From positions 67,580,001 through 67,644,000 of the forward strand of contig NW_026262701.1 of NCBI RefSeq assembly GCF_021869535.1: a DNA stretch of 64,000 bases, read 5' to 3'. The notes under the pieces were generated by a model. The model did not search any database, was not told the DNA's origin, and saw only the letters and a list, made by a program, of their open reading frames with translations. Shown piece after piece: positions 6,084-43,440 of this stretch (positions are counted from its first letter, which is position 1; the number at the start of each line of letters is the position of its first letter). Source of the DNA: Mytilus californianus (taxonomy: Eukaryota). A program made the position numbers and the translations under genes.

Positions 6084-8026
6084 GTATTTATTATAATTTG
6101 TTTTGTGGGTAATGTTATCTGTCCTTCTTCGACTAATGATGACGTCTTCTTTTTCTTCCGCTCTCGTTTAAAGAATACGCAAGTGATGTGAACTGATATT
6201 AGTTATTTAAGAGAGATTTTCAATACTGATTCCTCCTCCCCTTTTTCCTTTGCCCCTCCCCCAAACGCACACTAAACGACCTAAAATATCTATCAGGGTT
6301 ATAAGATTAATTTTTTCACTGTTAATTTATATGCAGTAGATAGTACACGTACCTTATTCCCCACCACCGAATAATGTGTGGTGCCGCGGAAATTGCTATC
6401 ATACGACTGTGTGTGTGTGTGTGTGTGCAGTGTAGTTACGTATTTTTTACCTACTTGAACACTGCTATGTTTTTAGTATGAACTTACGTTTTCCTACATT
6501 TCTGTTGCTTTTACGATTCTTCTTTCAGTTTTGGTATGATTTGTATCCAGGAAGGATATTACATGCAGGTTAAAACTGAACTTTACTACCTGTTTAGTGT
6601 AGTGTATTCAAATTGGTAATTTAAATTTACAACGAAATATGGTAAGGATTCATAGTATATATAAACATTATGCATATTTTGCCCCAATAAGGAATAAGCT
6701 AGTAAAGTTACAATTGAATTAACTGCTTTTAATATATTTGAATTATACTTTATACATGTTAATAGCTAGTAAATCGTGAAGCATCAAAAGTGTTTTGTCA
6801 GCTTATTTGATGTCCAAAACCAGTTAATTAAATTTAAAAAAAAACAGTTGAAGATAATTCCTCAGTGTTAAGCTACATATTTCAGATGGAACATTTTGTT
6901 CACCTATTTTATTTTTATTGATTATTATTTTCCGCAACGTTTATCTGCCAGTCAATTGAGCGCCCCCCCCCCCCCCAAATAAATTTGAAGGTCAATTGCT
7001 TATATTGTTAATTTCATACATAATAGTACTATAAACGGTTGGATGCATAACACCACTTTATATCATCAATTTATGTCACTTCATAGAACAAAGACAATTC
7101 GATGCGTTTAGAAATACCTTGTAGGCTTTATTTTCTTTAAAAGCGTTCGTTAGATGTAATAATACACTGTAATACCCAACAAGTACGCCATATGCAAGCA
7201 AAAGAGCTTCACTTTAGTCTGGTGTATGCAAATCCTGTTTTGAACGAAAGAACGTGTGATTTAATTTTCATAAACCAATACTTATATAACACTGCTATGC
7301 ATCCTTGGGATCGATTCCAAGCTTTGTTTGGTACTTTTGGAAGGAAAATCCTGCTGCATGGTTCACATGCTTACATAATTCTCTTTTAAGATACTCTTTG
7401 TAGGTTTGATCCACCATTTTCTACATAAGAAAATGCCTGTACCAAGTCAGGAATATGACAGTTGTTTTCCATTCGTTTGATGTTTGAGCTTTTGATTTTG
7501 CCAATTGTTAAGGGACTTACCGTTATTAATTTTTCCGTGGAGTTCGGTATTTTTGTTGTTTTACTTTTTGTTGACATGTTATATTTGTTTACCAGTCGAA
7601 ATAAAAGTCTGGCTTGAAACAAGTATACAAGTTTCAACAGAGCTTATTCGAAAAGAAAAGGCTCGATTTGTAGTAGACTCTGGATAAAATTCAGAGATAA
7701 TAAATAAGACCAACGCACAATAATGATTATTTAATAGAAAGCTACTATACACTCACAGTATTTTGAACGCCGACATACAACACAAATAACAGTACATCCA
7801 CCCTTTCTCTATTTCATCTCATGTCAAATACACAAATGCACACACTGTTTCGCAAGATTCACTCACAGGCACGTTCACTCTAACTTGCACAGACAAACAT
7901 GATCTTGCATACATAGCCTCTCTCACGCAATTACACAGACCAACATACATTAACATCAAAGAACACTTGTATTTATAATCATTTATAAATTAACCAATAA
8001 GGTCAACATCTCCTCAATGTTTATGT

Positions 8027-11000
8027 TTACTTCATGTTTTCTGTAGATTTGCAAAAGAATCCCCATCTCTTTTGATTCCACGGGTTAGTCTTATACCACC
8101 CAAAGGCAAAGTCTGACTCGTCTGTTGCGACCTTCAACTTAACGACCATCCCTGAAAATAAAAAAAACAAACCGAGTTTAGTTTTTTTTCCCTCTGCATT
8201 CCTAAATCTGATAAACTTAAAGATAGTTGTGAGAATGAAAATAGTGTAATATTTTATAAAAACAAAATGACAAACACTATCCTCTGGACTTTGATTCGTT
8301 ATTCTTTATATTAATTTGGTATCGTCTACCATTCATTTATGTACTTAAAAACCAAACACATGCATGTATATTGTATTAATATTTTTCTTTTGATTGTTTT
8401 GCGTCGTTGTATTGCTTTTTCATTGACATATATATAATCCTCTCAACACTTTTGAATCAAATCCAAATTTGTCTAATGTAAGTACAATTTATTTTCTTCG
8501 TGAAATGGTAAACATGATTATATAGACATTATATGGCTTGTGTACCTTTGAAGTTGATATTTCTTACCTTCCTTAATTTTGACAAAGCACTCGTTTGTTT
8601 TCACTGACAAGTCTTTTGTCTTTACATAATTGTTGATTAAAAAATCAAACTGGTTGTCTTGGCAACTGACGTCTGCAAAATGAAATATTGGAACAGTTAT
8701 TATATTAAGTCATTCAAATGGTATGTTGTAACACAGATATAGTATAATAGCAATTTAGGCTTATGAAAACCTCTGATTTCTCTAGAATATTTTAGTGCTA
8801 TTGCTTGTGTTTGACATATTTGCGCTGGATATGTGAAAGAACTGAACCGACGATAGAACTCACCGATTACTGGTTGCCGTCACAATTAGAAACTGACCAA
8901 GTATGTTTGCGAAGACATTAAGTATGGTGGCCGGATGCGGCCATTTCACCTTTTCGCGTTTTCTCCTTTCACTTTGCAAATGAGAAATCGGGAAATCGAG
9001 AAAGCGAGAAAGCGAGAAAGCGAAATCGAGAAATTGAGAAATTGAGAAATCGGGAAATCGAGAAATCAAGAAAGCAAGAACGCGAAAACGGGAAATGAAA
9101 TAGATTTCTCGATTTCGCGTTTTCGCTTTCCCGATTTCTAGATTTCCCGATTTCTCGATTTCTCGATTTCACGATTTCTCGATTTCTCGATTTCCCAATT
9201 TCCCAATTTCTCGATTTCTCGTGAAAGGAGAAAACGCGAAAACGCGAAATGGCCGCATCCGGCCACCATAATTAAGACCAATGGCTAATATAAGAATCGT
9301 TCTGTATAAAAAAAAAGTTGGACCATGAAAATAACAGTTCCATTAAATAAAATTCACATAACAAGCATTACACAAGCATGGCGTATATGCAAACAATGCT
9401 TTAATTAAAATAATAATAAGTATAAATTACATGTACAGTGAATTAAGAGGTGCTATATCTGAAGGTTTGTTGGCATCAACTGTCAACACAAAAATAAAAT
9501 AAAAAACACTTGTGCAAGCAAATTTTGTGCAAAACTGTGGTCTATATTTGAATGCAACTAAAATAAATCATTCACATGTCTGTGCTTGCGTGTACACTTT
9601 CAGACCATCACCCATGAAACTGAATGCCCCGAAATTTGTGGAATTATCCAATCAAAATAAACGTTATGGGCTGACTTACTATTGTTATTGCGTTGTTCTT
9701 TTGTCGCCTCAAATGGTTGTTCTTTCATTATCTGTATGGCTGATTTGTAATTAACAAATTGTACATCTGGAAGCTTGGCTTTATATCCGGTAGCAGTATG
9801 AAATTCCTATATGAAAATCATTGTAATTATCAATTTTGCTGTCATGATTAATACAAATTATGTGGAAGAGATCGCTTTTCAAGTGATAGTTCCATATGTA
9901 TGTACAGATTGAACAAAAAGAGATAAAAACAAGATTATTTTCAAGTTTGTAATCTTTTAACTAGTGCATATTTAGTTATTAACGAACTCTCTGAAAATCT
10001 TTTTGGTTGGTTTTTATTCCGTTCAGCTGCTTTCTCATTGACATATACCATACATCTATTATTCAAATTACAACCACAGATTAAACCAGCTCTCCAGGGA
10101 AACTTAAAAACAATTGCATGATAAATCGGTTTTTGTCTAGCACCCGACAACGAAGAATTTGAACAACTGCTATCTTTTAAATTAGGAAATCATACCTTTA
10201 TTGATAGATTCATATGCCTTATCATAAGGCTGGAATGATTTTTTTAAAAGCTACTTAGTTATGAAACTGTTACGTTTCATTTGATTGTTATTGGTTTATA
10301 TAGCCATGATAGAGAGGTTTCCTTGACAATAATCAACTATCAATAAGTCGCGATATTTGAAACAAAACATTTTACAAAGAGAGCATGGGCAATGTTAAAA
10401 CATGGCCCGATGACTTGTAAGGAAAAGAAAACTCACTTTTATGAAATTTAATAATAGTTGTAAACAGGGTAGACTATCGATTGAAATAATAAAACAAATG
10501 TCTAAAGCTACACTGGAAAAAAATATTGTTTGAATAAATAATCACCTGTGGTGAACTGAACTGGTATTTGGAGCTTAGTTTCTCTATAATTGATTCTGCA
10601 GCCAATCTGCAGTCAAAGTCGTCAATGTGTGGAAGTACTTCATAGAGTCTACAAGACAAACAAAAACACGATTAGTGATCTCTCCTGCAAGCGATATGTA
10701 CCAATAAAAAATAATGACTGTTTGTTATTCTTTTTTTTTTAAGAAAATGCCATTGGTTTTTTAACTTGAAAAATAATATCAATTTCGAATTTGATGGTTA
10801 ATTAGTCTTCTCGGTGACATTAACTTAAATGCAACGTGTTTCTCCTGAACTGTTTGATTGATAGTATCTTATAAATAAAAAGCCGTCTGTGTAAACGAGT
10901 TTGAACCTTTTTATAGTCGAGGGCCGTATTAAAATAGTGGCGAATCCAGGTTTTTGAAGAAGAAAAAGAGGTCATGCAACCGATTTATTTTTATTCCAAA

Positions 11001-14000
11001 ATCACCTTACTTTATCATGTATCAACAGTATTCAAGTCATTTAACAATATCTAGATTACGTACTCGTTAAAATTAGACAAAAAATCAGACAATCGTCCTA
11101 AAAAGGATCTTAAACTTCCACACTAGGCACTAAAAGTGTCCTTATTGAGTAACTAGATTGTAGGATTTTAATTTCCCTTTACACTCGTTATCACAACAAT
11201 GCATTCACATTATATGAAATGAATTACTTACTTGTTGGTGTGTGCTGCTAAGATGTATTTCATAGATAGCAATCCACTATGTATACGATCTGTTAAGTTG
11301 AATCTTATATCGTCCAATAGGTCACTTTCAAGCTAGATAATATATAATGAAAACAAGTGAAACTGTGAGCCACTGCTCATTGATGATACCAAATACTTGA
11401 CATGAAGTTGTTAAGTGATAAATCTGAAAACGCATCACACGGTATAGCTGACTTATATAAACCCTGAAACCTTTTTTAAAGCGGGGGTATAAAAAGTATC
11501 AAGCTCAAACTACGAAAATCCTCAAAAAGGATCATAAACCATGATAATCCGACTAATCCACCTATAATTGACTATTCAATTAAATTAAGGTACCAAGTAA
11601 ATTATTTTCCGCAGATTGTATAGCGATTTTGCACCATGTACTTCATTGTGTTCCTTTTAAGTTTTAAATTTGAACAACACATTTTCTTTATTCAAATTTT
11701 GTCTTCATTCAATAAAAAACAATTGACGGAACGTCCGAACTGAGAAATGGTGGAATGGGGGTAATCTATGCAAGTAGATGAAACGGTAATTTGTGTTTTA
11801 CAGTAAATCAAGCGGTTTCTTATACATCAATGAACCATACATTTCTCAGCTTGTACTTCCTTACATTGCACAAACTGAGCCATTTTATTCTCCAATTGAT
11901 TTTAACTCTTGGACGATTAAAATATTGAACCTATTAAAGTAATATTGACTCTTAAATTTTTCTTCTAAACTAACCAATCTCAAAGCATTTCTAGTCATTT
12001 TCTCTTTTGTCAGCAAAATTTGGTATCTCTTGACTGTTTCCGTTGCTTTCTGCTTTTTATCATTTAGTGTCGTCTGCAAATGCTCAATGCTGTTATTTCG
12101 AGCTTTCAGGTTTTTACTAGATAGTTTACCCGCCAGGTGGTTTAGTGACAACTCAGCCGTCTTCAGGCATAATTCGTATTTATGTACCTTATTGTCAGCA
12201 ATCCAACACATCTTTAAATATAAAACAATTTTAATTTTATTTGTTAGCAATGTAAAACACTACATTTCTAAAGACTAGCTAGAAACATGTGTACTAACAC
12301 TAAAGAATAGAGAGCGTATAGTTTTCCAAATGGTTTCATGGTTTGTTTTTTCAGACTGTTTATGTATGGCGATCTTACACTAAATCCATTGGATGTGTAC
12401 TGATTGAACATTTAGTTTAGGAAACATGATAAATGATCAGTTGTATTGGCTGTAAAATAGCTTTCAGTAATTGCGAATAATATAATATCGGTACTTTGTG
12501 TCTTTGGTATTTTATTAGTTGTTTTTGTGCTTTACATGGAATTACCCCTTTTCGATTTTACCTTGGAGTTATGTATTTTAAAAAAAAATTGTATCGATTT
12601 GACGAATCAAGCATTTTTCAACTGATATTTTACTCTTTGGTCTTATGTTGTGTCGTTACACCATGCACTATCCCAAGTTTGGTCTCTGGTGGATAATCGT
12701 CTTATTGGCAAAAATACCGCATCTTCCTATTTGTATATTATATTGGAGTTTGGTGAAGCATATAAGCTTTATCTTGGCCTTAAACAACACGAACAACCAA
12801 TGCCATAATTGTCACCTGAGCAACATTTTAGGTCGAACCTAACAATTTTGAAATATATCTCTTGAACAAAAAATAAAACTGAACTACCCTCTTGAAAAAG
12901 AGGTTAGCACACGAGTGCTTTTTGCTGTAAAATATTATACCTCTTGTTGTCGTTGAAGTTCTTTGTAAATATATGTATGTGTTCTCTGCAGTTTATTCAT
13001 TTCTTCGACCTTTGCATATAATTCTTTGGTTTTTATCTGATCAAATCTGAAAAAAGTGTAATTTAATATGAAATCTTGCAAGCGCATGCAACACTTTTGT
13101 GTACTTGAAGTAGAGCTCCTTTTTATGCATAAAGATTATCTATGCAAGTAGGAATATTTTGTTTCAGCAAATGTCTGTTGCTGTTGAACATTTACACAGA
13201 ATTCCGCTCTAATCGGTGCTAGTGACAGCTTTCAGCTTATTGAAGGTCTCACTATGACTTTGATATGATGAACACCAATAAAAGCGCTGTTGCTTTGCTT
13301 TTTGTTTTTTTTTCATGTGCGTGTACTGATTTTGTGTCATAAATCAACACATCATATCCTATATTTTTAATAATCTATACAATTATATTATAGGAGTCTG
13401 TTTTATTAGCGGCTTACCTGTAAAAGGCTTTCATATATCCAAAATATGAAGTGGTGGGTAACTCTGGGTAATACAAAGACACCATGTCTTTATGTTTCGG
13501 ATACACGAACGCCATCATCACCTTATGGTTTGGATACCACTTGACAGTAAATTTGTATACACGCTAACCTTTAACCGACAGGTCTTTAATAAAAAAAATG
13601 ACCGACTTAGTTTTGACTCCAAGGAAAGTGCATTTTACAAGTTTGTGCTTTTTGTGTAACTGAACTACTTTTGACAGTAAATACAGCAAACAATAGTTGT
13701 ACTATTTTAATCAAACAACTTACGTTGGAATTGGCAGAATGCTGTCAGATGATGAAACCACTTTAACGATTTTGTTCTGGATTCTTTCAGCAATGGACTT
13801 ACTACTGCTATAGCTAGCTGTCTCATGTGCTCCAACAACGCCCAACACCATCTCAGTCAGTAGATAAAACAACTTGTTTATTTCCGGAAATTCTGGAGAG
13901 AAAAACAATTATGAACGTCGCTCGAGTGAATGTGCTAGCAAATCTTAATAGCATACAAGTAATGTTTTACCGGATGTTGTGTCACTCATATGTCATTCAC

Positions 14001-14775
14001 ATCAAATCATTTCAAAAACTTATAGTTAAAGATCAAGTAACAATTAAGAAACAACGAACACTCCAGAACGCCCGGACGTCATATCGAAAGAACTGTATCC
14101 GTTCCCAGAGCTAGTGTCGATTTGCATTCTTTTATATGCGCAGGCGTTTAAAGCATGTCTATGGAAGAGTTTTCCAAGTTATGTTATGTATGTCTCGGTT
14201 TCTTTAAATGATGTCGAAATATATTTTATTCGCATTTTGATATTTTTCACTTGTAAAAAAAATCATATTCTTACCCATATTTTGTCTGTGTGCCATCACT
14301 TTCTGCAAGATGCTTTTTATGTGTTGTCTTGGGAAATCTCCAGTTTCCGAATTGAAGTTAACCTCAAGGGATTCGCTGATTGTAGCGAATACATCAATTC
14401 TGGAAAAAATGAATAATGATTGAAACCAACTAATAAACCTGACTTATTTTATGTTTTATAAGACGATTTCACTTCATACCAGATATTGTGTTTGTGTTCA
14501 AACTATTTGGCATGGGTATGTCTCATGCTAATAAGATTTTAGCAATTAATTAATTAAAATGTTTTAATAAAAACAATAATATACCCTTTCCCAGTGTTTC
14601 TGACAATGAAAAAGTGTATATAGGGGACCGTTAAAAGGGAAACAAAAGATAGAGTGGCAAAACAATGAAACTAGTATACATAATTGCGAAACATTTTCAA
14701 TGAAAAAACTTACGTTCTGTGTGCAACAGAAGTAATGCTGTAAATATCAGGAAAATAGACACAATCCATTTTCAT
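8027..14775 (-). CDS. Paralogue A: 10-exon gene, 419 aa; putative divergent F-BAR (FCH/coiled-coil) + SH3-like protein (PSTPIP/PACSIN/NOSTRIN-type architecture)
   Basis: Exons (minus strand): 14775-14714, 14399-14275, 13892-13724, 13046-12941, 12211-11975, 11332-11232, 10648-10546, 9806-9680, 8672-8568, 8151-8027. All introns are GT-AG, all phases are compatible, there are no internal stops, and every exon is mirrored in copy B. Protein: MKMDCVYFPDIYSITSVAHRTIDVFATISESLEVNFNSETGDFPRQHIKSILQKVMAHRQNMEFPEINKLFYLLTEMVLGVVGAHETASYSSSKSIAERIQNKIVKVVSSSDSILPIPTFDQIKTKELYAKVEEMNKLQRTHTYIYKELQRQQEMCWIADNKVHKYELCLKTAELSLNHLAGKLSSKNLKARNNSIEHLQTTLNDKKQKATETVKRYQILLTKEKMTRNALRLLESDLLDDIRFNLTDRIHSGLLSMKYILAAHTNKLYEVLPHIDDFDCRLAAESIIEKLSSKYQFSSPQEFHTATGYKAKLPDVQFVNYKSAIQIMKEQPFEATKEQRNNNNVSCQDNQFDFLINNYVKTKDLSVKTNECFVKIKEGMVVKLKVATDESDFAFGWYKTNPWNQKRWGFFCKSTENMK. 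The gene model is strong; the family call is inference (about 0.55). Confidence 0.88.
8925..9268. mobile_element. Foldback/MITE with ~48-bp TIRs, TA target duplication and inverted octamer arrays (intron 8 of paralogue A)
   Basis: TA|tggtggccggatgcggccatttc ... gaaatggccgcatccggccacca|TA. The left half is (GAGAAATC)n and the right half (GATTTCTC)n. Absent from the matching intron of copy B. Confidence 0.85.
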
Positions 14776-14789
14776 TTCTTCGATTTCTT

Positions 14790-14935
14790 TTGAAAAGTCT
14801 GCTACTCAGAATTTTCTTGCTGTGCTGGGTTTTCCGTCGTAGTGAGGGAAAGATAGCCCGGGGAAAAAGGTAACGTCATAATCTGGACGTCTTCTTGTTG
14901 GACGTTGGAAAAATGTAGAACGTCACAGATAAAGC
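14790..14935 (-). promoter_or_regulatory. Conserved 5'UTR/promoter block of paralogue A
   Basis: Aligns with 26590-26755 upstream of copy B; contains four ACGT cores, including TGACGT half-sites at 14873-14878 and 14920-14925. Confidence 0.55.
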
Positions 14936-15783
14936 GATTTTTAGTTGGTTTGGATGGGGAGGCAAAATTGTAAAATACTGTTAAAACTTTACGGCGGAGT
15001 ATCCTTTTTTGGTGATTTTAATGAAATTGTGTTGCATCTAGGGACCGACCATTTAACTCTAATGGAGTGTTATGTTTTTTCTTTAAAAACAATTCTGATT
15101 CCCAACATTGAAGAAAAAAGGATTTTGATCAGGGAAAGGAAAAAAATATTTTCTGACTGAGAGTATTTGCCATTAAATTTTGATAATGAAAATTTTCGCG
15201 CTTCGCAATAAAAAAAATAAATAATTTGATGCTTACGTGGTGCCAAAATATTTTCTAAATGAAATGAAAACATACCTTCCTCTTCTTGAAAGCCAAATGG
15301 TCGTTCCCTTACAACTCTTTGAACTAAATTTGAATATACTTCCATTGATAATATCCATTTCGTGAATATATAAAATGTACATAAAAGCGTCGTTAAATTC
15401 TTGATTTCTCTTTAATTGTGAATTTCTGAAAACCTGTAAGTTATGAAAAAATGTTTTAAAGTGACATGGTATTGCTAAGAACATTTTCGTTTTAAATTCA
15501 TATGGGTTCACCGTATTCATTGTTTTTATTTTGTAGGAATCAGCTAATCTCAATATAAAGAATAAAAGACAAAATAAGCGTAATGTTAATTGTAAAGATT
15601 TGTCTTCGTTGGACCACAAGGGTACTGACTGGAGTATAGAAATATATGATTACCTGGTCTTTTCCCATTCTATAAAATCCATGCTAAATGAAAATAACAC
15701 TCTATAATGTTCGTACGTCCGAGGCAATTTTCTTAATTTACCTTCATAAGGAATACTCGAACCTAAACCTTTGAAATCCAGGG

Positions 15784-17345
15784 ATGTATAAAAACCTAGA
15801 AACGTATAGAGAGTATATTATTGTTACACAGCTGTCCAAGGTTAGAGTTTGGGTTGTCGCCTTCAAACTAGTTCAACCCCGCCACATTCTGTATGTGCCT
15901 GTCCCAAGTCAGAAGCCTGTAATTTGTTGCTGTATGCCATATTTGTTTTTCGTTCATCATTTTGTACATACATCAGGCCGTTAGTTTTCTCGTTTGAATT
16001 GTTTTACATTTGTCATTTACCCTGTTCAGTCTATACTCTCTTTTACTATGTTATTGTCCAGAAGGAGGGAGATAGTTTACCAACATGTCGAGCGGAAATC
16101 TTTAGCGCAATTTACATATTTTAAACGAAAATCTTTAAGCGTTTTTCTATCATTTTATTTTTTAATTATAATTTCCAGGACCGGATTTGCCCAAATTTTA
16201 ATCCGTCTTGGGATTAAGTGTTTAGAAATCTACCCAATTTTTTATTTGACAGTAGATAAGATTCAATAGGGATGGTTATCCGATGATTACCGTATGGTTC
16301 ATCATATATGTAGTGTAGCTAACCATCTAGTTCATAGAGTTTGAGAACGAGTTGCAGTTTAAGATAATCTTCAAGTTCGAGTTAAAGTTGGAATTGAAAT
16401 TTGAGTTAGAGTGAAAACTTGGAGTCCAAGAATTTCTTCTTAGAGCTGGAGTCGGTATTCGAGTTTTTGTAAACATTCGAAGACGAGTACAAATTCGACT
16501 TAATTGTCAATTTGGGTTTTGTTTTGCACTTTGACATTGAGTTACCGTATACCTTAGAGGAAAACATAAAAAACTATCTAACATTCATTTTTCAGCTGAT
16601 AAAATAATAAGAAGACGGGGTATGATTTCCAATGGGACAACTTTCCACCTGGGACCAAATGACGTAGAAGTTAGCAATTATAGGTCACCCTATGGCCTTC
16701 AGCAATGAGCAAAACCTATACCGCATAGCAAGCTATAAATGGTCTTAGCGGACACGACAAATGTAAAACAATCCAAACGAGAAAAACTAATTTATGTAAA
16801 AAATATAAACGAAAAGTAAATATGATAGACAGCAACCAACGACAACCAATGAATTAAATGTTCTGGGAAAGGCACAACCCTCTCCTAATCTGGGATAGTA
16901 GCGTAACAGCAAAACATCAGAAACAAAGTGTACGAATCAGTTGGAAAAAAAAGTAAAATAACAAAAAAACTGTCATATTCGTGACTTGGTACAGGCATTT
17001 TCTTATGTAGAAAATGGGGGATTAAACTTGGTTTTATAGTTAGCTAAACCTCCCACTTGTATAACAGTCGCATAGAATTCCATTATATTGACAACAATGT
17101 GTGAGAAAATCAAACAGACATAATAGGTAAAAATGTCAAAAATTGGGATACAGCAGTCAACATTATGATATATCTTAATCACTATAAAAACAAATAACTA
17201 TTTCAACAAAGGAAAACAAATTAAATGGCATAAGACACTCTATAGACAAAGTACATAAGCAAAAATGAAAGACAAGAATACAAAATTGACCATAGCACAA
17301 TAACACAATGGCGGGATGTATAAGTACCGAGCCACGCCAAAAGTA
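15784..17345. repeat. Cluster of mussel-type interspersed repeat fragments
   Basis: gtgcctgtcccaagtcag module (~15895), gggtatgatttccaatgggacaac module (~16618) and actgtcatattcgtgacttggtacaggc module (~16970-17340), each repeated elsewhere in the window. Confidence 0.7.
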
Positions 17346-17399
17346 TATTACCAAAAATGGACTAAACAGTAAAGGAATATTTATCAACAAGGTCTTGGT

Positions 17400-18065
17400 A
17401 TCTTCCAATGAGTTTTTTTTTTTTTAGAAAAAGGACGAGACATTCTTTGACATAACCTTGGCTCATAAACTTTCTGCTCAGACACTGGTGACGTTTTATA
17501 AAGTCTGACTAGCAGCTGCAAGCTCTTGAATACCGAATGAGTTGGGAAATGTATATCCCATATGCAGGTAAAATTGGGCTATTGCTGCTAAGGTGGGGGA
17601 AATTTATGATTTCAAATTAAAATCGTCTCATTTGTCATAGATTCTGGTACTGAGATGACCGCCGTGTCTGTTGTTTCTTTAATTTATAGTTCTGGCGGAT
17701 ATATTAATGGAACCCAATCAGAAAAGTTTGGATTGTTAATTGAAAGAACACCATCAATATATCTGATTGTGAAATTAAATGATCTGGCTTCTTTGATCTT
17801 CTTGTTTTTGACAGATGTCCGAAGGAACTCCGACTCATATGAAAATAAGAAGAGGTCGGCTAGGAGAGGAGCACAGATCTTTCCCATAGGAATGCTGACC
17901 ATTTGTTGAAAAAGTCTACCTTCAAATTCAACAAATATGCGGTCAATAAGAAACTCCAGCATACTGATCACTTGTTCCTCTGTATACCATGTTTTACCTC
18001 TTTGTTCACTATTAACAAAATATGCCGTATGGTATCCCAAAGCAATAAATTTATAGCGTATGCTT
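17400..18065 (-). mobile_element. Penelope-like element reverse transcriptase fragment (degraded)
   Basis: ORF 17684-18040: FQQMVSIPMGKICAPLLADLFLFSYE...RYIDGVLSINN, matching PLE GIPMG..CAP..ADL and RYIDD motifs. Continues as AYGIYISQLIRYSRAC at ~17500-17570. Confidence 0.85.
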
Positions 18066-18108
18066 CAAATTTTATATTGAAAAAAAGCAAAACATAAGAA
18101 CAAAATAT

Positions 18109-21100
18109 AACTAGAGGCTCTAAAGAGCATGGGTTGCTCACCTACGTCTCTGTGCATCTCAGTCAACAAAGGACACTCTCCAACATTGTAGATGAGAATA
18201 GAATTGGTGACAAATTTCTCTTTTTTTATCTTATATGGCAGATAATTTTTTCTGTATACAATTTCTCTCATTCTCCTTTAGTTTTTGCCTAAACACAAAA
18301 AAGGGTAAAAAAATCGTCAATTAAGGACAATCACTCATATACTATATAATATAAATAAAAAATGTGTAGATCTTGTCTTGCTGATAATTTTTGCAATTTA
18401 GGGTGTCTATCTATCATATATAGTTTTCAATATGTTTTTTATATAAAAATCGTCATTAAAGAGCAAAACCCTCATAAAGAGTCGACGGACGATTTCGGCC
18501 ATTAATCTTATTTGTAAATCTTGTTTTGCTGATCATTCTGGCTTCTAAAATTTCTTTATATCTCTTATAGTTTTTAATATCGATTTTGTCATCAGCAAAT
18601 TAAAACATAACTAAATTTGTATTCTTTTCTAACGTTTTTTTGGGATGTATAAATACACATCCACGTTCATTTTCTATATAGAGATTACTCCATCTATATA
18701 TTACATTATACATATTTATTAACAGGTTAACTCCTACTACTATCCTACTGACTGTCGATACTTTTATTTTGGCATTGCACAAGTCATGTCTTCTTCGACG
18801 TTAAAATACTAAATCCCTGGATGTGTTTTAGTTGATTTTAGTTTCTGGTGCACGATTTTTTATTATTAATTGTTTTTGGCTTTTAACAAGCTTTCAGTAA
18901 CTGCGAGTACTCTCAAATCGTACTTTCGTGTTAATTTGACCTGTTGATACAATTTGTAATGTATTTTTGTTATTTAATGTTTACTTATTCAGTGTTATAT
19001 CTAGTCTCACTATTTTTATATATACCACCTTTGATAAGTGTTTAGTATGACGATAAATTTTCACTTTTGTTTTCGTACTTGGAACAACAAAATTATTTAT
19101 TTTGTAAAAATTATTTCCGTACTCTATGTATACCTTACAACAAAATTATTTTTATTTACCTGTGTACGTTATTTTATTTGGCGGAATTTTGTCCAAAGTT
19201 ATGGTTGTCTTTCTGATATTGTTTTAAATCTAACCCCCTTGTTTTATTAATTTTGTATTTATATTGTGTCATAGATCAAATTTATTCGTTCAGTGTATGT
19301 TTAATATTGAGAATGGAAATGGGGAATGTGTCAAAGACAACAACCCGACCATAGAACAGACAACAGCAGAGGGTCACCAACAGGTCTTCAATGCAGCGAG
19401 AAATTCCATGAACCCTGAGGCGTCCTTCAGCTGGCCCCTAAACAAATATATATACTAGTTCAGTGATAATGAACGCCATACTAAACTCCAAATTGTACAC
19501 AAGAAACTAAAATTAAAAATAATACTTGTTTTTGTTAATATGTCTTTTGATTGAGTTAAGCCATTTCAATTGATATTTTATAGTGTGTCTTTCTATGTTG
19601 TGATGTTACATTATTGTTTCAGGTAGGGTGACGGTTGGCGCCTATTAAAACGTTTAAACCCACTGCATTTGTTTGCACCTGTCCTAAGTCAGGAACCTGA
19701 TGTTCAGTGGTTGTCGTTTGTTGATGTGGTTCATAAGTGTTTCTCGTTTCTCGTTTTTTTTATATAGATTAGACCGTTGGTTTTCCTGTTTGAATGGTTT
19801 TACACTAGTCATTTTTTTGGTGCCCTTTAAAGCTTGCTGTTCGATGTGAGCCAATGCTCCGTGTTGAAGGCCGTACTTTGACATATAATGGTTTACTTTT
19901 ACAAAATGTGACTTGGATGGAGAGTTGTCTCATTGGCACTCATACCACATCTTCTTATATCTATTTAGATTATAACACAAAAACGCAAAAAAAAAACAAA
20001 ATAGTAAAATAATGTCATTAAAGGTCACCAATTCCAATAAGGACGATTTCGGCCATTTGAATTATTTGTAGATCTTGTCTTGCTGGTAATTTTTGCCATT
20101 AACAGTGTCTACGTTTATATTATAGTTTTCAAGATAACACGCAAAAACACTAGAAATTATAAAAATCGTCATTAAAGAGCAATAACTCCGATAAGGAATC
20201 GACTGACGATTTCGGCCATTAGTATTCTGGCTTTTAAAAGTTTATATCTATCATTATAGTTTAATAAGATATAAGACTAAAAAGCAAAAACAAAAGGTAA
20301 ATTTTGTCATTAGAGGGCAATATCTCTAATAAGGAGTCCTCTAACGATTACGGCTATCATGTTGAATTATTTGTAGATCTTGTCTTGCTGATCAGTTTTG
20401 CTATAAAAAGTGTCTATATATCTATTATAGTTTTCAAGATAATATCCAAAAACACTAAATGATAATTTCAGCCGATAGACTTATTTGTAGATCTTGTTTT
20501 GCTGATCATTATGGCTTTTGAAGTTTTTGTCTATCTATCATAGTTTTTAAGATACAAAGACAAAAAAGCAAAAATTGTCATTAAGGGGTAATAACTCCAA
20601 TAAGGAGTTATCTGACGATTACCAATATGCTAACTTATTTGTAGATCTTGTATTGCTGATCAATTTTGCTGTTTAATGTTTCTTTCTATCTATATATTAT
20701 AGTTTTCAAGATAATAGGCAAACACACTAAAAATTAAAAAAAATCGTCATTGAAAAAAGCAATAACTCCAATTTGTAGATCTTGTTTTTATCATTCAAGA
20801 TAATTTGCAGAAATGGGGGAAATAAATGGTAAAATTCGTCATTAAAGGGTAATAACTCATATAAGAAGTAATGTTGTCTGACAGTTTAGACGTAAATGGA
20901 CAGTAGGTAGATCTCAACATTCTGATCATTTCTGCCACTGTCAGATTTTCTCTATATACTAGTATATCGGTTTTTAAGATAATAGACAAAACTTGCATTT
21001 TACCCTTATGTCCAATTTTTAGTCTTGTTTGCCATGTTGGTCAGAAGGCGTAGCAATCGGATACATTTGTAAACTAAATACCCCAACGATGATTGTGGCC

Positions 21101-21222
21101 AAGTTTGGGTAAATTTGGCCCTGTGGTTTCAGAGAAGATTTATGTTAGAGTTAACGGACGACGACGAGGGGTGCTAAGTAATGAGAAAAATGCACTTGGC
21201 CCTTTGAGCTAGGTGAGCTAAA
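18109..21222. mobile_element. Helentron/HINE-like non-autonomous element (aactagaggctc...ggtgagctaaa family) with ~160-bp internal tandem units and nested repeats
   Basis: Same termini as copies at 36167, 48423 and 56352. Internal repeats gtagatcttgtcttgctga..gtcattaaagggcaataactcc at ~18280-18600 and 19990-20870; interrupted by interspersed-repeat fragments at ~18690-19970. Confidence 0.75.
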
Positions 21223-21830
21223 TCAGTTGAAAAAGTCTTGACTAATCAGATCAACGAACAAAAAGAAATATCACTCCATTTTCTATATATATGTATAAGC
21301 GCAGATTTCAGTATCTATTAATGCTACTGTAGTTCAAGTTTCCTAATGGGAGATGTATTTACCTTATCAGAGTGGCTAAACACAACTCAGATCATTGGGA
21401 AATAAAATGATTTTACAAGTATTCACATAATTTGTAAATAAAAACCAAGATCAATTCATAAAAATAAATATTTAATAAAAGGTTTCATAAACATACACAC
21501 TTACATTCAACTCACAGATGTCACCTCTCTCTACCTTTCTCCTCAATAAACACTCATACTCATACAGATACAAAAAATCAAGCCACAGTCTGTCGATCAG
21601 TCCACCGACGCATATTCTCACACTTCTCACACAGACATATTCTCGCACACTCAAAACAAAAATATGTCCTCAATGTCCATGATGTCTCACAGGGACAAGT
21701 ATACTCTCACTCTATATATCACACACACCCACACACATATACGCCTACATATCAACAATGAAGCACGTGTTGTTTTAATCCATCCATAATAAAGTCAACA
21801 TCTAATCAAAGTTTATTTTCACTTCGTGAT

Positions 21831-24800
21831 TTAAGAGGATTTCCAAAAGAATCCCCATCTCTTTTGATTCCATGGGTTTGTCTTATACCACCCGAAGGCA
21901 ACGTCCGACTCGTCTGTGGCGACCTTCAACTTTACGACCATCCCTGAAAGAAAACAATCAAGATTTTTGTTTAACCTTGCATTCCCTGAACTGGTGAAAG
22001 TTTTAAAAAAAAATGATGATAGAGGGAGGAGTGTATTGTTTACCCGTTTGAAATATGAAACAAAATGAAAGACAATTTCCTCTGGATTTATACTCTTTAT
22101 TCCCTTCTAAATTTTAGTTTCTTCTGCCTCTTATTTATATCATAGTGATATAAAATTTATATTATTTTATTGTTCTTCTTTCTTTTTGTCTCCTAGTTGT
22201 CTCTTTTTTCTGTTTCTTGTTGTGTTCTTTGATTGCTGTTTCATTGGTGTATTCCTCCAACATATTTTTATTTACAAATGTATATATGTTTACACTTATT
22301 CTCATTGTTTTTGGCATGGGTTCTATTTTGAGAGACATTTGTCAAAACAAGAAACTGGTTCATGGCATTGGCATCGTATAATGTTATCATGACTGTATCT
22401 TCTGTCGTTTGTTTCTCCTCTCTATATACTATATTCGAAACCATCGTTATGACTTACCTTCTGTAATTTTGACACAGCATTTGTTTGTTTTCTCTGATAA
22501 GTCTTTTGTATTCACATAAGTGTTGATTAAAAAATTGAACTGGTTGTCTTGGCAACTGACGTCTGCAACACAAAATCGTTATCCCTTTGTTAGTGTTTAT
22601 CATTTAAAAAAAAAGGCAAATTGTAGCACAAGCATATTGTAGTTGCAACCGTATGTCAATTATGGCTTAAGTATCTTGTTTTTTTTTGTATTTGCAGTCG
22701 TATATCAAGTATGGCTTTAGCATCTTGTTATATATATAAACTTCATATTTCAGTGTTCGATATTCGCTCTGGTGTGTGAAAGAAGTTAATTGTAGAAACT
22801 CACCAGCTCTTTATCTTATTACACAAACACGGCCAATACAAATAATGCTACAAAATCATGACTTGTTGGTTTTCCCTTTGATTTGTTTTATATTTTGTAA
22901 TGTCAGGGCTTATCCTTTAGGTTAGATGTTTATATTTTCGATCTTTAGTCTCTGATGGAAATTGTCTCATTAGCAATAATACCAAATCTCCTTATTTTTT
23001 AATGAAAATAATAAATACACAATTAAGCGACTTACTATTATTATTGCGTTGTTCTTTGGTTGTAACAGATGGTTCTTCCTTCATTATATGTTGAGCTCTT
23101 TTGTGACTGACAAATTGTATCTCTGGTAGTTTGGTTTTGAATCTGTTTGCATTTCGAAATTCCTACACGAAATTCATCAAAGTAGTCAATATCACAACCA
23201 CAATTTACAAAACTGTGTTTACTATTAGAATGATAATTGCAAATATATGTGCTGTTCACAATAAACAATAAGAGAAAACAAATTTTCAAGCCTGTTATCC
23301 TTTAGTTATAACTGAAGAATATTCTAGTTCCAAGACATTACAACGACAAATGTTCTTAATATTTTCTGTAGGAACATATTTGTTTTTGTCTAGCACGTGA
23401 CGTAAGAATAATTACCTGTGGTGAACTGAACTGGTATTTGGAGCTAAGTTTATCTATTATTGATTCTGCAGCCAATCGGCAGTCAAAATTGTCAATGTGT
23501 GGAAGTAGTTCATAGAATCTACAAGACAAAAAATGGTGAATCCGCAAAAGGGTTTATAAACGTATCAATCAGAACAAGAACTGTTTGTCAGACAATTATT
23601 TGATTGTTCTCATAATGTACAAGTGTTACTAATTTAGGTCAGCAACAATATTATCAGTCTAGAAAGACCCAAAATTTCCACACAGAGGACTTCATGTGTT
23701 CATTTTATTAGGTAACGATCGTGTATAAGTTCTCTCTCATAAACAGTCACCCCTCTATTTCCTGTTACTTTCAATAATAATTATTACAACATATTCAATA
23801 ATATCTTACACCAATAACTTACTTGTTCGTTTGTGTTGCTAAGATGTATTTCAGACACACTAGTCCGCTCTGTAAACGCTCTACCAAGTTGAATTGTATA
23901 TCATCCAATAGTTCCCTTTCGAGCTAGATAACAAACAATAGAAAAATCGTATCAAGACTGAACTATGATAGGCATATACTAAACAAAATTCAAGTTCAGA
24001 TAAATCGTTATTACAGATTTTTAAAGAGCTATTCTACGCCGTGTTCTTGGAATTTATTGTGTTCTCTTTGTGTGTTAATTTGAATTTGTGGTTTTCTTTG
24101 AATAAAAAAAAAAATAAAAACAACTGACAGAAAGTGTGGGTCGACCAATAGTTGAGATTCATGTATAGGAAACGAAAAAATGGTTTATAAGTATTCTGTG
24201 CAAATCGATAAAATAGAAAATATCTTGCATTAAAAAACATCTATCATCTACACAACTAAATAATTTCTGAGTCATTTATATTTTCATTGCATTGTAAAAC
24301 AGTACAATACTAATAATAAAGATTAAAAATTGTACACTGATTTTTAGTTCTTCTGTCAAACTAACCAATCTCAAAGCATTTCTTGTAGTTTGCTCTTTTG
24401 TCATCAAAATTGAGTATCTCTTGGCTGTTTCCGCTGCTTTCTCTTTTTTATCAGTTAGTGTAGTCTGCAAATATTCAATGCTGTCATCTTTGGCTTTCAG
24501 TTTTGATCTTGATAGTTTGTTCGAATTGAAATATCTTGACAACTCGGCCGTTTTCAAGCATAATTCGTATTTCTCTACTTTACGGTCAGCAGTCCAACAG
24601 ATCTTTAAATATAAAACAATGTTATATTTAGTTGTTATTACGCCATATAACACAATTCATTTTCTAAACACCAGCTGCATGTGAATAGATTTTCCTAAAA
24701 ACTGTGGGAAAATGAATATACAAGCTTGATCGATGTTTGTTAAATGGTTTTTAATTGAAAAAAGTATTGATTGCATTTTTGTCTTCAATAAAGAGAGAGG

Positions 24801-26582
24801 GAGAAACAATACCAGTACATGCAATATTTATTTTATAGCAATTCGAATATCTGACCTAACAATTTTTGCAACCATCGACCCCTCGCCCCCAAAAAAGTAA
24901 GTAGGTTTTCAAATGAGTAGATTACGCTGTAAGAATTTACCTCCTGTTGTCTTTGTAGTTCTTTGTATATATATTTATGTGTTTTCATCAGTATATTCAT
25001 TTCTTCAACCTTTGCATGATATTCCTCAGTTGTTTTCTGATCAAAGCTGAAATATGTACAGCGTTATGAACAACACTCTCGTTAATATAGGGCATAGAAG
25101 TCAAAGAACGCTTTTGTGTATTTAAAGTAGAAACCTACTAGCTCATATAGGCATATATAGATTATATTTACAAGAAGAACAAACACTTTGTTTCTGATCT
25201 GTGTTATGCAAATATATGTTTAATCAACACTTTCATAAAATGAATGAATTCTGGAAAGCAACCACGAATATATCTTCTCACAATTGCTTCTAGCAAAATT
25301 ATACACCAGGTTAAACTATAGAGTAATCCGTTTATTTTTTTTAGCTGTCAATCCGTAAAAGGCTTTCATGTATTCAAAACAGAAAGCGCGGTTGTTCTAC
25401 TTTATATTTGGGTACAAAAAATCTTTTATTATAAACAGGCTACTAATAAAAAATTACTTAGTAACCGACTTCAAAGAAAGTGTATTGTACTTATTCATAT
25501 TTGTTTTTAATATTTCTGTGAGTTATCTGATTGAAACAACTTACGTTGGTATTGACAGAATGCTGTCAGAGGATGAAACCAGTTTAACGATTTTGTTATG
25601 AACCCTTTCTGCAACGGACTTTTTACTACTAGCTGTCTGATCATGTAAGCCGACGACACACAACAACGTCTCAGTCAGTAGATAAAACAACTTGTTTAAT
25701 TCCGGAAATTCTGGAACGAAAAAAGTTATGCATGCATATAATTAAATAGATATATCGAGTAAACTTTAGAATGTAAGATAGCATGCCAACTATAACGGTT
25801 TCCAAAAAAAAAAATGAAGATGCAAATTCACAATATGCTAATAAGAATAAGGAGATGTGGAATGATTGCCAATAAGACAACAATCCAAGCAACAACTAAG
25901 GCATAACGAAAAATTCAGAACGATTAATTAAAATTGTTTTCAAATTTATTTATGGTCACTAATCGATCAATCTTCCCAGTTACATTTACTACAAAACAGC
26001 TGCGATTGTCTAAAGTATAAATACCATCCACTGTTTCGTCGATATGCACTCTATTGCATGTGCAGCCGCTGATGTGAAAGTTTATGTGGGCGTTTGGAAG
26101 GCCAAGTGATGTTTTGTTCGCATTTTGATATTTTCTACCACTAAAATTAACTAACGTTTAACCTTACCCAAATTCTGTCTATAAGTCAGCAACTTCTTCA
26201 TGGTGCGTTTTATTTGTTGTCTGGGAAATTCGGCTGTTTTAGAATTGAAGTTCACCTCAAGTGTCTCGGTAATTGTGGAGAATACATCAATTCTGAAAAA
26301 AATGAGCTCGACATCAAGTTAGGAAACTTACTTATTTGAATTTTCCTTTGGATATGCTAGTTGGATTTTTTAGTTTTAAGACGGTTTCACTTCCGATGAT
26401 TATGTATCCCCCCCCCCCAAAAAAAAATAAAATAAAAAGAAAGCCATGCAAGATTCATTGGAGGTAATGTGGCAAACAAATAAAATTATACATAACTGCC
26501 AAAAATTTTCAACAAAAACAACTTACGTTCTCTGTGAAACTGATGTAATGCTGAAAATATCAGGAAAATAAACACAATTCAT
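21831..26582 (-). CDS. Paralogue B: 10-exon gene, 412 aa; putative divergent F-BAR + SH3-like protein
   Basis: Exons (minus strand): 26582-26527, 26292-26168, 25710-25545, 25046-24941, 24602-24366, 23923-23823, 23518-23416, 23162-23036, 22562-22458, 21943-21831. All introns GT-AG; internal exon lengths equal copy A except a 3-nt indel in exon 3. Protein: MNCVYFPDIFSITSVSQRTIDVFSTITETLEVNFNSKTAEFPRQQIKRTMKKLLTYRQNLEFPELNKLFYLLTETLLCVVGLHDQTASSKKSVAERVHNKIVKLVSSSDSILSIPTFDQKTTEEYHAKVEEMNILMKTHKYIYKELQRQQEICWTADRKVEKYELCLKTAELSRYFNSNKLSRSKLKAKDDSIEYLQTTLTDKKEKAAETAKRYSILMTKEQTTRNALRLLERELLDDIQFNLVERLQSGLVCLKYILATQTNKFYELLPHIDNFDCRLAAESIIDKLSSKYQFSSPQEFRNANRFKTKLPEIQFVSHKRAQHIMKEEPSVTTKEQRNNNNVSCQDNQFNFLINTYVNTKDLSEKTNKCCVKITEGMVVKLKVATDESDVAFGWYKTNPWNQKRWGFFWKSS. 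Confidence 0.88.
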
Positions 26583-26589
26583 TTTCTTT

Positions 26590-26755
26590 TCTTCGATTCC
26601 CTTTGAAAAGACTGCTACTCAGAATTTTCTTGCTGGACTTTCCGTCGTAGTGAGGGAAAGTTAGCCCGGATGTTGGAAAAACGTAACGTCATAATCTGAA
26701 CGTCTTCTTGTTGGACGTTGGAAAAACAGAAGAAGAGGCAGAACGTCACAGGTAA
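26590..26755 (-). promoter_or_regulatory. Conserved 5'UTR/promoter block of paralogue B
   Basis: Homologous to 14790-14935; TGACGT half-sites at 26686-26691 and 26743-26748. Confidence 0.55.
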
Positions 26756-43150: not shown

Positions 43151-43219
43151 AAGAATTCAAGAATAAAACCCCATTGAAATTGATCAAGAAATAAGCAATT
43201 TATACGAAGTATCTTCTTT

Positions 43220-43440
43220 TGCACAATACTGTGCAATTGATTATTTCTTGCTATTGCGCAATACTGTACAATTGACAATTTCTTGCTATTGCGCAATATT
43301 GTGCTATTGGATATTTCTTGCTATTGCGCAATACTGTGCAATTGAAGATTTCTTGCTATTGCGCAATACTGTGCAATTGAAGATTTCTTGCTATTGTGCA
43401 ATACTGTGCAATTGAAAATTTCTTGCTATTGCACAATACT
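43220..43440 (-). repeat. 35-bp tandem array with ATTGCGCAAT palindromes
   Basis: Reverse complement of the 34520-34765 unit; about six units. Confidence 0.9.

What the first reader, a model, noticed from the sequence alone, without database searches (positions are those of the whole stretch)
8027..26582. Hidden tandem pair of intact 10-exon genes encoding a divergent F-BAR + SH3-like protein
Seen: two complete, stop-free, phase-consistent gene models (419 and 412 aa) with identical exon structure; only about three exons per copy appear in the ORF track. Known: PSTPIP/PACSIN/NOSTRIN proteins are ~410-450 aa, with a ~300-aa helical F-BAR ending near a P.(E)F motif, then a linker and a C-terminal SH3. 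Inference: the N-terminal 300 aa are helical/coiled-coil, with an F-BAR-like alpha2 (EINKLFYLLTEM..VVGAH..SIAERI) and end (LRLLE..DDIRF...HIDDFDCR..ESII..SSPQEF). The C-terminus has SH3-like spacing (VKIKEGMVVKL..GWY..KRWGFF). However, the canonical FCH R..E..Y motif, the SH3 ALYDY and the GxFP proline are not recognisable. This may therefore be a lineage-specific, functionally altered membrane-shaping adaptor family that has expanded by tandem duplication.
Basis: partly seen in the sequence, partly recalled or inferred. Interest (0 to 1): 0.8.

Follow-up and report, generated by a model that had tools for sequence, protein, structure and literature searches.

The report
Mussel-specific tandem genes, possibly F-BAR-like
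Two neighbouring, intact and spliced 10-exon genes in the California mussel encode members of an unnamed, mussel-restricted protein family with a long helical domain and a small beta domain; it may be a very divergent F-BAR/PACSIN-type adaptor, but that is only weakly supported.

Summary
Two minus-strand 10-exon genes (A 8027-14775, 419 aa; B 21831-26582, 412 aa) have GT-AG introns throughout, identical phases and 73% protein identity. dN/dS is 0.30. Contigs of a probable RNA run join six of gene B's nine predicted junctions exactly.

The window is Mytilus californianus chromosome record JAKFGE010000005.1. RefSeq already annotates both genes, but only as N-terminally truncated "uncharacterized" proteins of 163 and 281 aa. 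Full-length 415-423 aa relatives are annotated in four other Mytilus species. The B-then-A tandem order is conserved in M. galloprovincialis.

The family has no Pfam or PDB sequence match. A 1.84-billion-protein search found it essentially only in Mytilus.

The F-BAR reading rests on consistent but non-significant leads:
- Language-model neighbours are PACSIN, Nostrin and CIP4.
- 22 of the top 50 Foldseek hits are F-BAR chains, best E 0.004.

The SH3 call is unproven. The region is predicted as beta strands at moderate confidence, with no profile hit and most hallmark residues missing.

Verdict: a real, partly annotated lineage-specific family whose fold assignment remains open.

The parts
14714..14775 (-). 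Gene A exon 1 (ATG at 14775)
   Evidence: colinear with the N-termini of full-length Mytilus proteins
14275..14399 (-). Gene A exon 2
   Evidence: AG/GT borders, phase 2
13724..13892 (-). Gene A exon 3
12941..13046 (-). Gene A exon 4
11975..12211 (-). Gene A exon 5 (longest exon; query of the exhaustive protein search)
11232..11332 (-). Gene A exon 6 (the RefSeq LOC127701362 model starts at an internal Met here)
10546..10648 (-). Gene A exon 7
9680..9806 (-). Gene A exon 8 (linker)
8568..8672 (-). Gene A exon 9 (start of the C-terminal beta domain)
8027..8151 (-). Gene A exon 10 with stop codon
26527..26582 (-). Gene B exon 1 (ATG at 26582)
26168..26292 (-). Gene B exon 2
25545..25710 (-). Gene B exon 3
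   Evidence: joined to exon 4 in an X1 contig
24941..25046 (-). Gene B exon 4
24366..24602 (-). Gene B exon 5
23823..23923 (-). Gene B exon 6
23416..23518 (-). Gene B exon 7
23036..23162 (-). Gene B exon 8
22458..22562 (-). Gene B exon 9
21831..21943 (-). Gene B exon 10 with stop codon; the transcript contig runs on to at least 21708 (3' UTR)
14776..14925 (-). Conserved region upstream of the gene A ATG: two TGACGTT motifs (14872-14878, 14919-14925) and a 21-nt element (14831-14851)
26583..26748 (-). Conserved region upstream of the gene B ATG: two TGACGTT motifs (26685-26691, 26742-26748) and the same 21-nt element (26639-26659)

Best explanation
Shown: A and B are two functional, spliced paralogues under purifying selection. 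They belong to an unnamed protein family found so far essentially only in Mytilus mussels. The family has at least two subfamilies and several loci per genome. A and B form a tandem pair that predates the split of the sampled Mytilus species.

Predicted: each protein has three parts.
- A ~300-aa elongated helical-bundle domain, with a very confident antiparallel hairpin of about 58 and 77 residues.
- A ~40-aa disordered, Asn-rich linker.
- A ~70-aa aromatic-rich beta domain.

Inferred: the protein is a cytosolic scaffold or adaptor with BAR-superfamily-like architecture, most like F-BAR plus SH3 proteins of the PACSIN/PSTPIP type. On this reading the helical domain would dimerise into an elongated, mildly basic rod or crescent that binds a membrane or cytoskeletal surface. 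A conserved hydrophobic Pro-rich loop at about residues 110-120 could play the part of the PACSIN wedge loop. The tethered beta domain would bind a partner peptide or fold back to regulate the helical domain. Homology to F-BAR is a hypothesis, not shown.
For: Gene reality:
- Exon models.
- Spliced contigs at six gene B junctions.
- RefSeq partial proteins identical to the models.
- dN/dS 0.30 with dS 0.48 between A and B.
- A and B fall in separate clades, each with orthologues in other Mytilus.
- The same B-then-A tandem order in M. galloprovincialis.

Architecture:
- AlphaFold2 model of the 80%-identical M. edulis proxy P0018: pLDDT 73.8, pTM 0.60.
- Helices 121-178 and 185-261 have pLDDT above 90, residues 325-354 are disordered, and four strands lie between 357 and 412.
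- Each of the three parts has pI 8.5-10.5; whole-protein pI is 8.9 (A) and 9.1 (B).

F-BAR leads:
- ESM feature neighbours of the whole protein are all PACSIN, Nostrin, CIP4 or Bzz1 (score 0.86).
- Residues 1-305 alone give FCH/F-BAR clusters (0.88).
- 22 of the top 50 Foldseek PDB hits are F-BAR chains for both models; best are CIP4 2efk at E 3.9e-3 and syndapin 2x3v at 1.4e-2.
- The top ESM Atlas shape hits are a molluscan FCH/RhoGAP cluster (TM 0.42) and FNBP1L (TM 0.40).
- PACSIN wedge-loop insertion and regulation of the F-BAR domain by its SH3 domain are described in PMC3517540.
Against: - No Pfam FCH, F-BAR or SH3 hit at E up to 10, for single exons, full-length relatives or the C-terminal domain.
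- No PDB sequence or profile hit to F-BAR or SH3.
- No Foldseek hit reaches E 0.001, and TM-scores are only 0.2-0.3.
- The ESM hits share only 150 features, which is in the range of chance or distant relatives.
- The C-terminal piece alone gives no SH3 neighbours.
- Residues 37-111 of the model, where the FCH motif would lie, are poorly predicted. No R..E..Y motif is visible there.
- Dimerisation and membrane binding are untested.
Confidence: 0.4

Rival explanations
1. A lineage-specific elongated coiled-coil or helical-bundle scaffold unrelated to the BAR superfamily, carrying a novel small beta domain. On this reading the resemblance to F-BAR proteins is the generic likeness of long antiparallel helices followed by a small C-terminal domain.
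For: - Generic hairpin proteins score as high as or higher than F-BAR domains.
- No profile-level hit to any family.
- The family is restricted to Mytilus plus a few unplaced contigs in a 1.84-billion-protein search.
- All F-BAR leads are below the tools' own significance guides.
Against: - F-BAR chains fill 22 of the top 50 Foldseek ranks for two different models, far more than their share of helical PDB entries.
- Three different methods converge on the same family.
- The overall layout, about 300 helical residues, a linker and about 70 beta residues in a ~420-aa protein, is that of PACSIN and PSTPIP.
Confidence: 0.4
2. A Smac/DIABLO-like elongated three-helix bundle acting on IAP (BIR) proteins.
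For: - The only Pinctada trace of the family lies 6 kb from a BIR-domain gene.
Against: - No mitochondrial presequence or N-terminal Ala-Val-Pro-Ile-type IAP-binding motif is visible at the conserved N-terminus.
- The match leaves residues 1-125 and the beta domain unexplained.
- BIR genes are very numerous in bivalves (own knowledge), so the neighbourhood means little.
Confidence: 0.05
3. The copies are decaying duplicates or annotation artefacts without function.
For: - RefSeq kept only truncated models.
- A 6% sample of the one certain RNA-seq run (X5) showed no reads on gene B exons.
Against: - Both reading frames are intact across 10 exons.
- dN/dS is 0.30 at dS 0.48.
- Spliced contigs match the predicted junctions.
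- Orthologues of each copy are kept in other Mytilus species.
Confidence: 0.03
4. The C-terminal domain is derived from an immunoglobulin V-type domain rather than an SH3 domain.
For: - The C-terminal profile's only PDB hits are nanobody and TCR V domains, through a motif like framework 2 of antibodies (E 0.16-1).
- ESM features of the C-terminal piece give Ig-type clusters (0.76-0.81).
Against: - All scores are at chance level.
- Only about 35 residues align.
- The protein ends about 15 residues after the motif, so a full Ig fold cannot form.
- There is no signal peptide.
Confidence: 0.03

Closest known systems
PACSIN/syndapin and PSTPIP (F-BAR + SH3 adaptors; Pfam PF00611 FCH, PF00018 SH3_1)
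   Same: - Overall size of about 410-450 aa.
- About 300 helical residues, then a disordered linker, then a small C-terminal beta domain.
- Long antiparallel helices.
- Mildly basic.
- A hydrophobic loop near residue 110-120, comparable in position to the PACSIN wedge loop (M126 in pacsin-1, PMC3517540).
- Top neighbours by ESM features and high Foldseek ranks.
   Different: - No FCH profile match and no recognisable FCH motif.
- The predicted long helices are shorter (58 and 77 residues).
- Beta strands are predicted at residues 2-7 and 291-296.
- The C-terminal domain lacks the ALYDY motif, the second Trp of the WW pair and the Pro of the SH3 consensus.
- Restricted to Mytilus.
FCHO2, CIP4 and FBP17 F-BAR/EFC domains (PDB 2v0o, 2efk, 2efl)
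   Different: Rmsd is 4.7-5.5 over 147-166 residues, TM is 0.2-0.3 and identity 9-12%. They do not stand above unrelated helical hairpins.
Generic long helical hairpins and three-helix bundles (YscO, dynein stalk, p85 iSH2, Smac/DIABLO)
   Different: They cover only the hairpin or the last three helices, not residues 1-115 or the beta domain. There is no sequence relationship.

Membership tests
F-BAR (FCH-BAR/EFC) domain | Match to the Pfam FCH profile (PF00611) or related FCH models | tested here: not met
   No FCH hit at E up to 10 for single exons, for 13 full-length or partial relatives, or for subfamily 2.
F-BAR (FCH-BAR/EFC) domain | Conserved FCH motif in the first long helix (Arg..Glu..Tyr-Ala pattern; own knowledge of the family) | tested here: not met
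By inspection of alignments A1 and A4, no such pattern lies in residues 40-110.
F-BAR (FCH-BAR/EFC) domain | About 250-300-aa bundle of three long antiparallel helices plus short terminal helices | tested here: inconclusive
   The model has helices 43-86 (broken, low pLDDT), 121-178 and 185-261 (pLDDT above 90), and short helices 264-306. This is compatible but not specific.
F-BAR (FCH-BAR/EFC) domain | Structural similarity to solved F-BAR domains above background | tested here: inconclusive
F-BAR (FCH-BAR/EFC) domain | Antiparallel homodimer forming a crescent with a basic membrane-binding face | not testable with these tools
   Only single-chain prediction was available. The helical domain has pI 8.5-8.7.
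SH3 domain | Match to SH3-clan profiles (PF00018, PF07653, PF14604) | tested here: not met
   None of the 19 C-terminal domains gives an SH3 hit at E up to 10. The profile search against PDB sequences finds no SH3 protein.
SH3 domain | Five-stranded beta barrel of about 60 residues | tested here: inconclusive
   Strands at 357-359, 380-386, 392-398 and 406-412 have pLDDT 54-76.
SH3 domain | Ligand-binding residues: ALYDY tyrosines, the WW dipeptide, Pro and Tyr of the 3-10 region (own knowledge) | tested here: not met
   Only Gly-Trp-Tyr, with the first Trp, and a Gly-Phe-Phe remain. There is no ALYDY and no Pro (alignment A6). The spacing does fit an SH3 domain with longer RT and n-Src loops.
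Smac/DIABLO | Mitochondrial presequence exposing an N-terminal IAP-binding tetrapeptide | tested here: not met
   The conserved N-terminus (Met-Asp-Cys-Val-Tyr-Phe-Pro-Asp) is predicted as a beta strand packed in the fold at pLDDT 90. No Ala-Val-Pro-Ile-type motif is present.

The most novel reading that the evidence does not exclude
The family is a mussel-born, extremely divergent branch of the F-BAR superfamily. It has lost the FCH signature, and its SH3-derived tail has lost the proline-peptide binding residues. That would make it a new BAR subfamily with altered membrane and ligand specificity, expanded by tandem and dispersed duplication in Mytilus.
Probability: 0.3. Interest if true: 0.55.

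Novelty: new variant of a known kind. Interest (0 to 1): 0.35.

Why it matters
If the helical domain is a true BAR-type module, this would be a rare case of a membrane-shaping adaptor family that arose or diverged beyond recognition within one bivalve lineage and then expanded. It would give a handle on mussel-specific membrane traffic, for example in secretion or haemocyte biology.

In practical terms, the two M. californianus RefSeq models (LOC127701362 and LOC127701342) are N-terminally truncated. They can be corrected to 419 and 412 aa.

If the fold is only a generic coiled coil, this is one more uncharacterised lineage-specific bivalve family of modest interest.

Tried and rejected
- Pfam on single exons, on relatives and on the C-terminal domain found nothing above noise.
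- PDB sequence and profile searches found nothing relevant.
- The first AlphaFold2 run, with a shallow 28-sequence alignment, gave pLDDT 55 and only the hairpin was confident. Adding the divergent subfamily raised this to 73.8.
- A family HMM run over the six-frame translation of the Pinctada locus found only the exon-5-like piece. That row was itself in the model, so extension of the family to Pteriidae is not shown.
- Earlier findings of this scan were blank by place, by words and by sequence.
- Literature searches for Mytilus plus F-BAR and for six of the family's RefSeq gene (LOC) numbers, including the three M. californianus loci, found nothing relevant.
- A profile-profile comparison with an F-BAR alignment could not be run, because no F-BAR sequence was available by reference and typing one from memory is unreliable.
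- The exact window proteins could not be submitted whole, because a spliced product has no reference. The proxy P0018 (80% identical to A) and the exact partial proteins P0037 and P0028 were used instead.
- The pseudogene reading was rejected on dN/dS, intact frames and splicing.
Full report
**1. Observation**

blastn of 7000-16000 against 20500-28000 gives ten colinear conserved blocks at 76-92% identity. Reading these on the minus strand and assembling them gives two 10-exon models:
- Gene A, 8027-14775, 1260 nt, 419 aa.
- Gene B, 21831-26582, 1239 nt, 412 aa.

All 18 introns are GT-AG. Exon phases are identical in the two copies and there is no internal stop. tblastn finds no third copy in the window. 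The proteins are 73% identical. Nei-Gojobori estimates give dS 0.48, dN 0.147 and dN/dS 0.30, so both copies have been under purifying selection since an old duplication.

**2. Transcription and splicing**

Reads and contigs of four runs were laid on 21700-26800. Run X1 is recorded as a probable RNA run, which is a guess.
- One 876-nt X1 contig joins gene B exons 5-6-7-8-9-10.
- One 177-nt X1 contig joins exons 3-4.
- Every joint lies at the predicted junction, in two cases allowing the stated cut shift of +1.
- None of these joints occurs in DNA runs X2 or X4.
- The contig extends to 21708, so the 3' UTR is at least about 120 nt.
- A 6% sample of the certain RNA-seq run X5 had no reads on the exons, so expression in that sample is low or absent.

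Five small probable-RNA runs hold 7-11% of its words, against an exon share of 18.5%.

**3. Identity of the locus**

- P0028 (M. californianus LOC127701342, 281 aa) is 100% identical to B residues 132-412.
- P0037 (LOC127701362, 163 aa) is 100% identical to A residues 257-419.
- The encoding contig is GCA_021869535.1 JAKFGE010000005.1, and record position equals 67,580,000 plus window position.

The genes are therefore annotated, but as N-terminally truncated "uncharacterized" proteins. They are colinear with 415-423 aa RefSeq or GenBank proteins of M. edulis, M. galloprovincialis, M. trossulus and M. coruscus. They are also colinear with an uninterrupted 431-aa ORF on a 1591-nt Logan contig, which is probably an mRNA.

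**4. Family range**

An exhaustive phmmer search with exon 5 of gene A against 1.84 billion representative proteins found 13 proteins. All that carry a name are Mytilus proteins, except a 99-aa Pinctada imbricata ORF at 37% identity. Two profile word searches returned only Mytilus proteins and a few unnamed Logan-contig ORFs, and revealed a second subfamily of 409-442 aa, about 34% identical (P0046-P0049).

Other traces of the family:
- A Logan contig (L003) encodes a 40%-identical near full-length homologue with one frameshift.
- Two genomic Logan contigs from another run carry exon 5 plus an adjacent exon.
- In Pinctada only the exon-5-like piece is detectable within 10 kb either side.

A maximum-likelihood tree puts A and B in different clades, each with members from other Mytilus species. 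The B clade has 96/92 support and the A clade 90/96. In M. galloprovincialis the B-type gene P0004 lies 2.8 kb upstream of the A-type gene P0020 on the same strand, the same order as in the window. The tandem pair therefore predates the divergence of these species. M. californianus has at least a third locus, LOC127703007.

**5. What the protein is**

No Pfam family matches single exons, relatives or the C-terminal domain at E up to 10. There is no relevant PDB sequence or profile hit.

I therefore modelled P0018 from M. edulis, which is 80% identical to A. With a 34-row alignment that includes the divergent subfamily, AlphaFold2 gives pLDDT 73.8 and pTM 0.60:
- A strand at residues 2-7.
- Broken, low-confidence helices up to residue 105.
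- A conserved hydrophobic Pro-rich loop at about 106-120.
- A very confident hairpin, helices 121-178 and 185-261, pLDDT above 90.
- Short helices and a strand up to residue 306.
- A disordered Asn-rich linker at 325-354.
- Four strands between 357 and 412 at pLDDT 54-76.

Each part is mildly basic. No signal peptide or membrane span is apparent by inspection.

**6. Test of the F-BAR call**

In favour:
- ESM feature neighbours of the whole protein are all F-BAR plus SH3 families: PACSIN1-3, Nostrin, CIP4 and Bzz1 (0.86, 150 shared features).
- Residues 1-305 alone still give FCH/F-BAR clusters (0.88).
- For both models, 22 of the top 50 Foldseek PDB hits are F-BAR chains. The best are CIP4 2efk at E 3.9e-3 and syndapin 2x3v at 1.4e-2.
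- The ESM Atlas shape search puts a molluscan FCH/RhoGAP cluster (TM 0.42) and FNBP1L (TM 0.40) at or near the top.

Against:
- Nothing reaches the tools' own significance guides.
- TM-scores are 0.2-0.3.
- The feature count of 150 is in the range of chance or distant relatives.
- The FCH profile and motif are absent.
- The region where the FCH motif would lie is poorly modelled.

I rate homology to F-BAR at about 0.3-0.4. The broader statement, an elongated helical scaffold with a tethered small beta domain, I rate much higher.

**7. Test of the SH3 call**

There is no SH3 profile hit. The C-terminal piece alone has no SH3 neighbours, only chance-level Ig-type clusters. The C-terminal profile's only PDB hits are a motif like antibody framework 2, at E 0.16-1.

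By inspection of alignment A6, the spacing fits an SH3 domain with longer RT and n-Src loops:
- A Lys-Glu-Gly-Met turn followed by a strand.
- Gly-Trp-Tyr.
- Trp-Gly-Phe-Phe.
- The 11-residue insertion of subfamily 2 falls where the RT loop would be.

The ALYDY motif, the second Trp and the Pro are missing. This is an inference from the recalled consensus, not a test.

**8. Mechanism proposed**

This section is inferred. The protein would be a cytosolic adaptor in which the helical domain dimerises into a rod or crescent on a membrane or cytoskeletal surface. The hydrophobic loop could act as an insertion wedge, as described for pacsin-1, where M126 lies in the wedge loop and the SH3 domain regulates the F-BAR domain (PMC3517540). 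The beta domain would bind a partner or regulate the helical domain. Rival explanations and their odds are listed separately.

**9. Novelty and score**

The genes are real and the models improve on the RefSeq annotation of this species. The family is already present in databases as uncharacterised proteins, it has no literature, and its fold assignment remains open. Interest is moderate at 0.35.

Noticed in passing
window 14831-14925 and 26639-26748 (minus strand); L003 230-340: Two TGACGTT motifs and a shared 21-nt element (TTTCCCTCAC...GGAAA) lie at equivalent positions 76-166 nt upstream of both ATGs. They account for 4 of the 6 TGACGTT occurrences in the whole window. The motifs are also kept in the 5' region of the 40%-identical paralogue contig L003. 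They may be bZIP/CRE-type control elements or conserved 5' UTR.
   Followed up: partly
window 22962-22999 and 25841-25887: Very high-copy short repeats sit in gene B introns 8 and 2. Summed depth is 25,000-200,000 in DNA runs, against about 40 for the flanks. They are also present in RNA reads, and their loose ends look like inverted-repeat (MITE-like) termini.
   Followed up: no
window 8027-11263 and 21831-25000: RefSeq models LOC127701362 (163 aa) and LOC127701342 (281 aa) start at internal methionines, in exons 6 and 4. They miss 256 and 131 N-terminal residues that are present in orthologues.
   Followed up: yes
just below window position 1 (record about 67,579,297 downward), minus strand: A 580-aa gene with a weak B-box hit lies downstream of gene A. 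The M. coruscus model P0042 (605 aa, B-box) fuses fragments of this family to such a gene, which is probably an annotation merge of neighbours.
   Followed up: partly
window 17684-18040 (minus) and 31385-31732 (minus): Retroelement remnants. An ORF between the two genes looks like reverse transcriptase by eye but has no Pfam hit at E 0.01. A clear RVT_1 fragment (E 1.8e-7) lies inside the neighbouring prefoldin gene.
   Followed up: partly
window 51247-53016 (minus): A single-exon 589-aa ORF carries several C2H2 zinc fingers (PF00096, E 6.5e-16).
   Followed up: partly
window 41782-43151; also 43212-43440 and 34584-34763: A satellite array with 126/262-bp units, about 5-10 copies at 85% match. 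35-bp repeats with the same core occur on opposite strands at two sites.
   Followed up: no
window 9103-9221: A (GATTTCTC)n microsatellite of about 15 copies in intron 8 of gene A. It produces spurious repetitive ORFs on both strands.
   Followed up: no
window about 29150-35000 (plus): A gene called with a Prefoldin_2 domain (134 aa product) lies upstream of gene B on the opposite strand.
   Followed up: no
L002 10001-10300 (Pinctada imbricata VSWD01000008.1): A lone exon-5-like ORF, 37% identical to exon 5 of gene A, has no other detectable exons within 10 kb. It lies 6 kb from a BIR-domain gene. It may be a relic or a very divergent member.
   Followed up: partly
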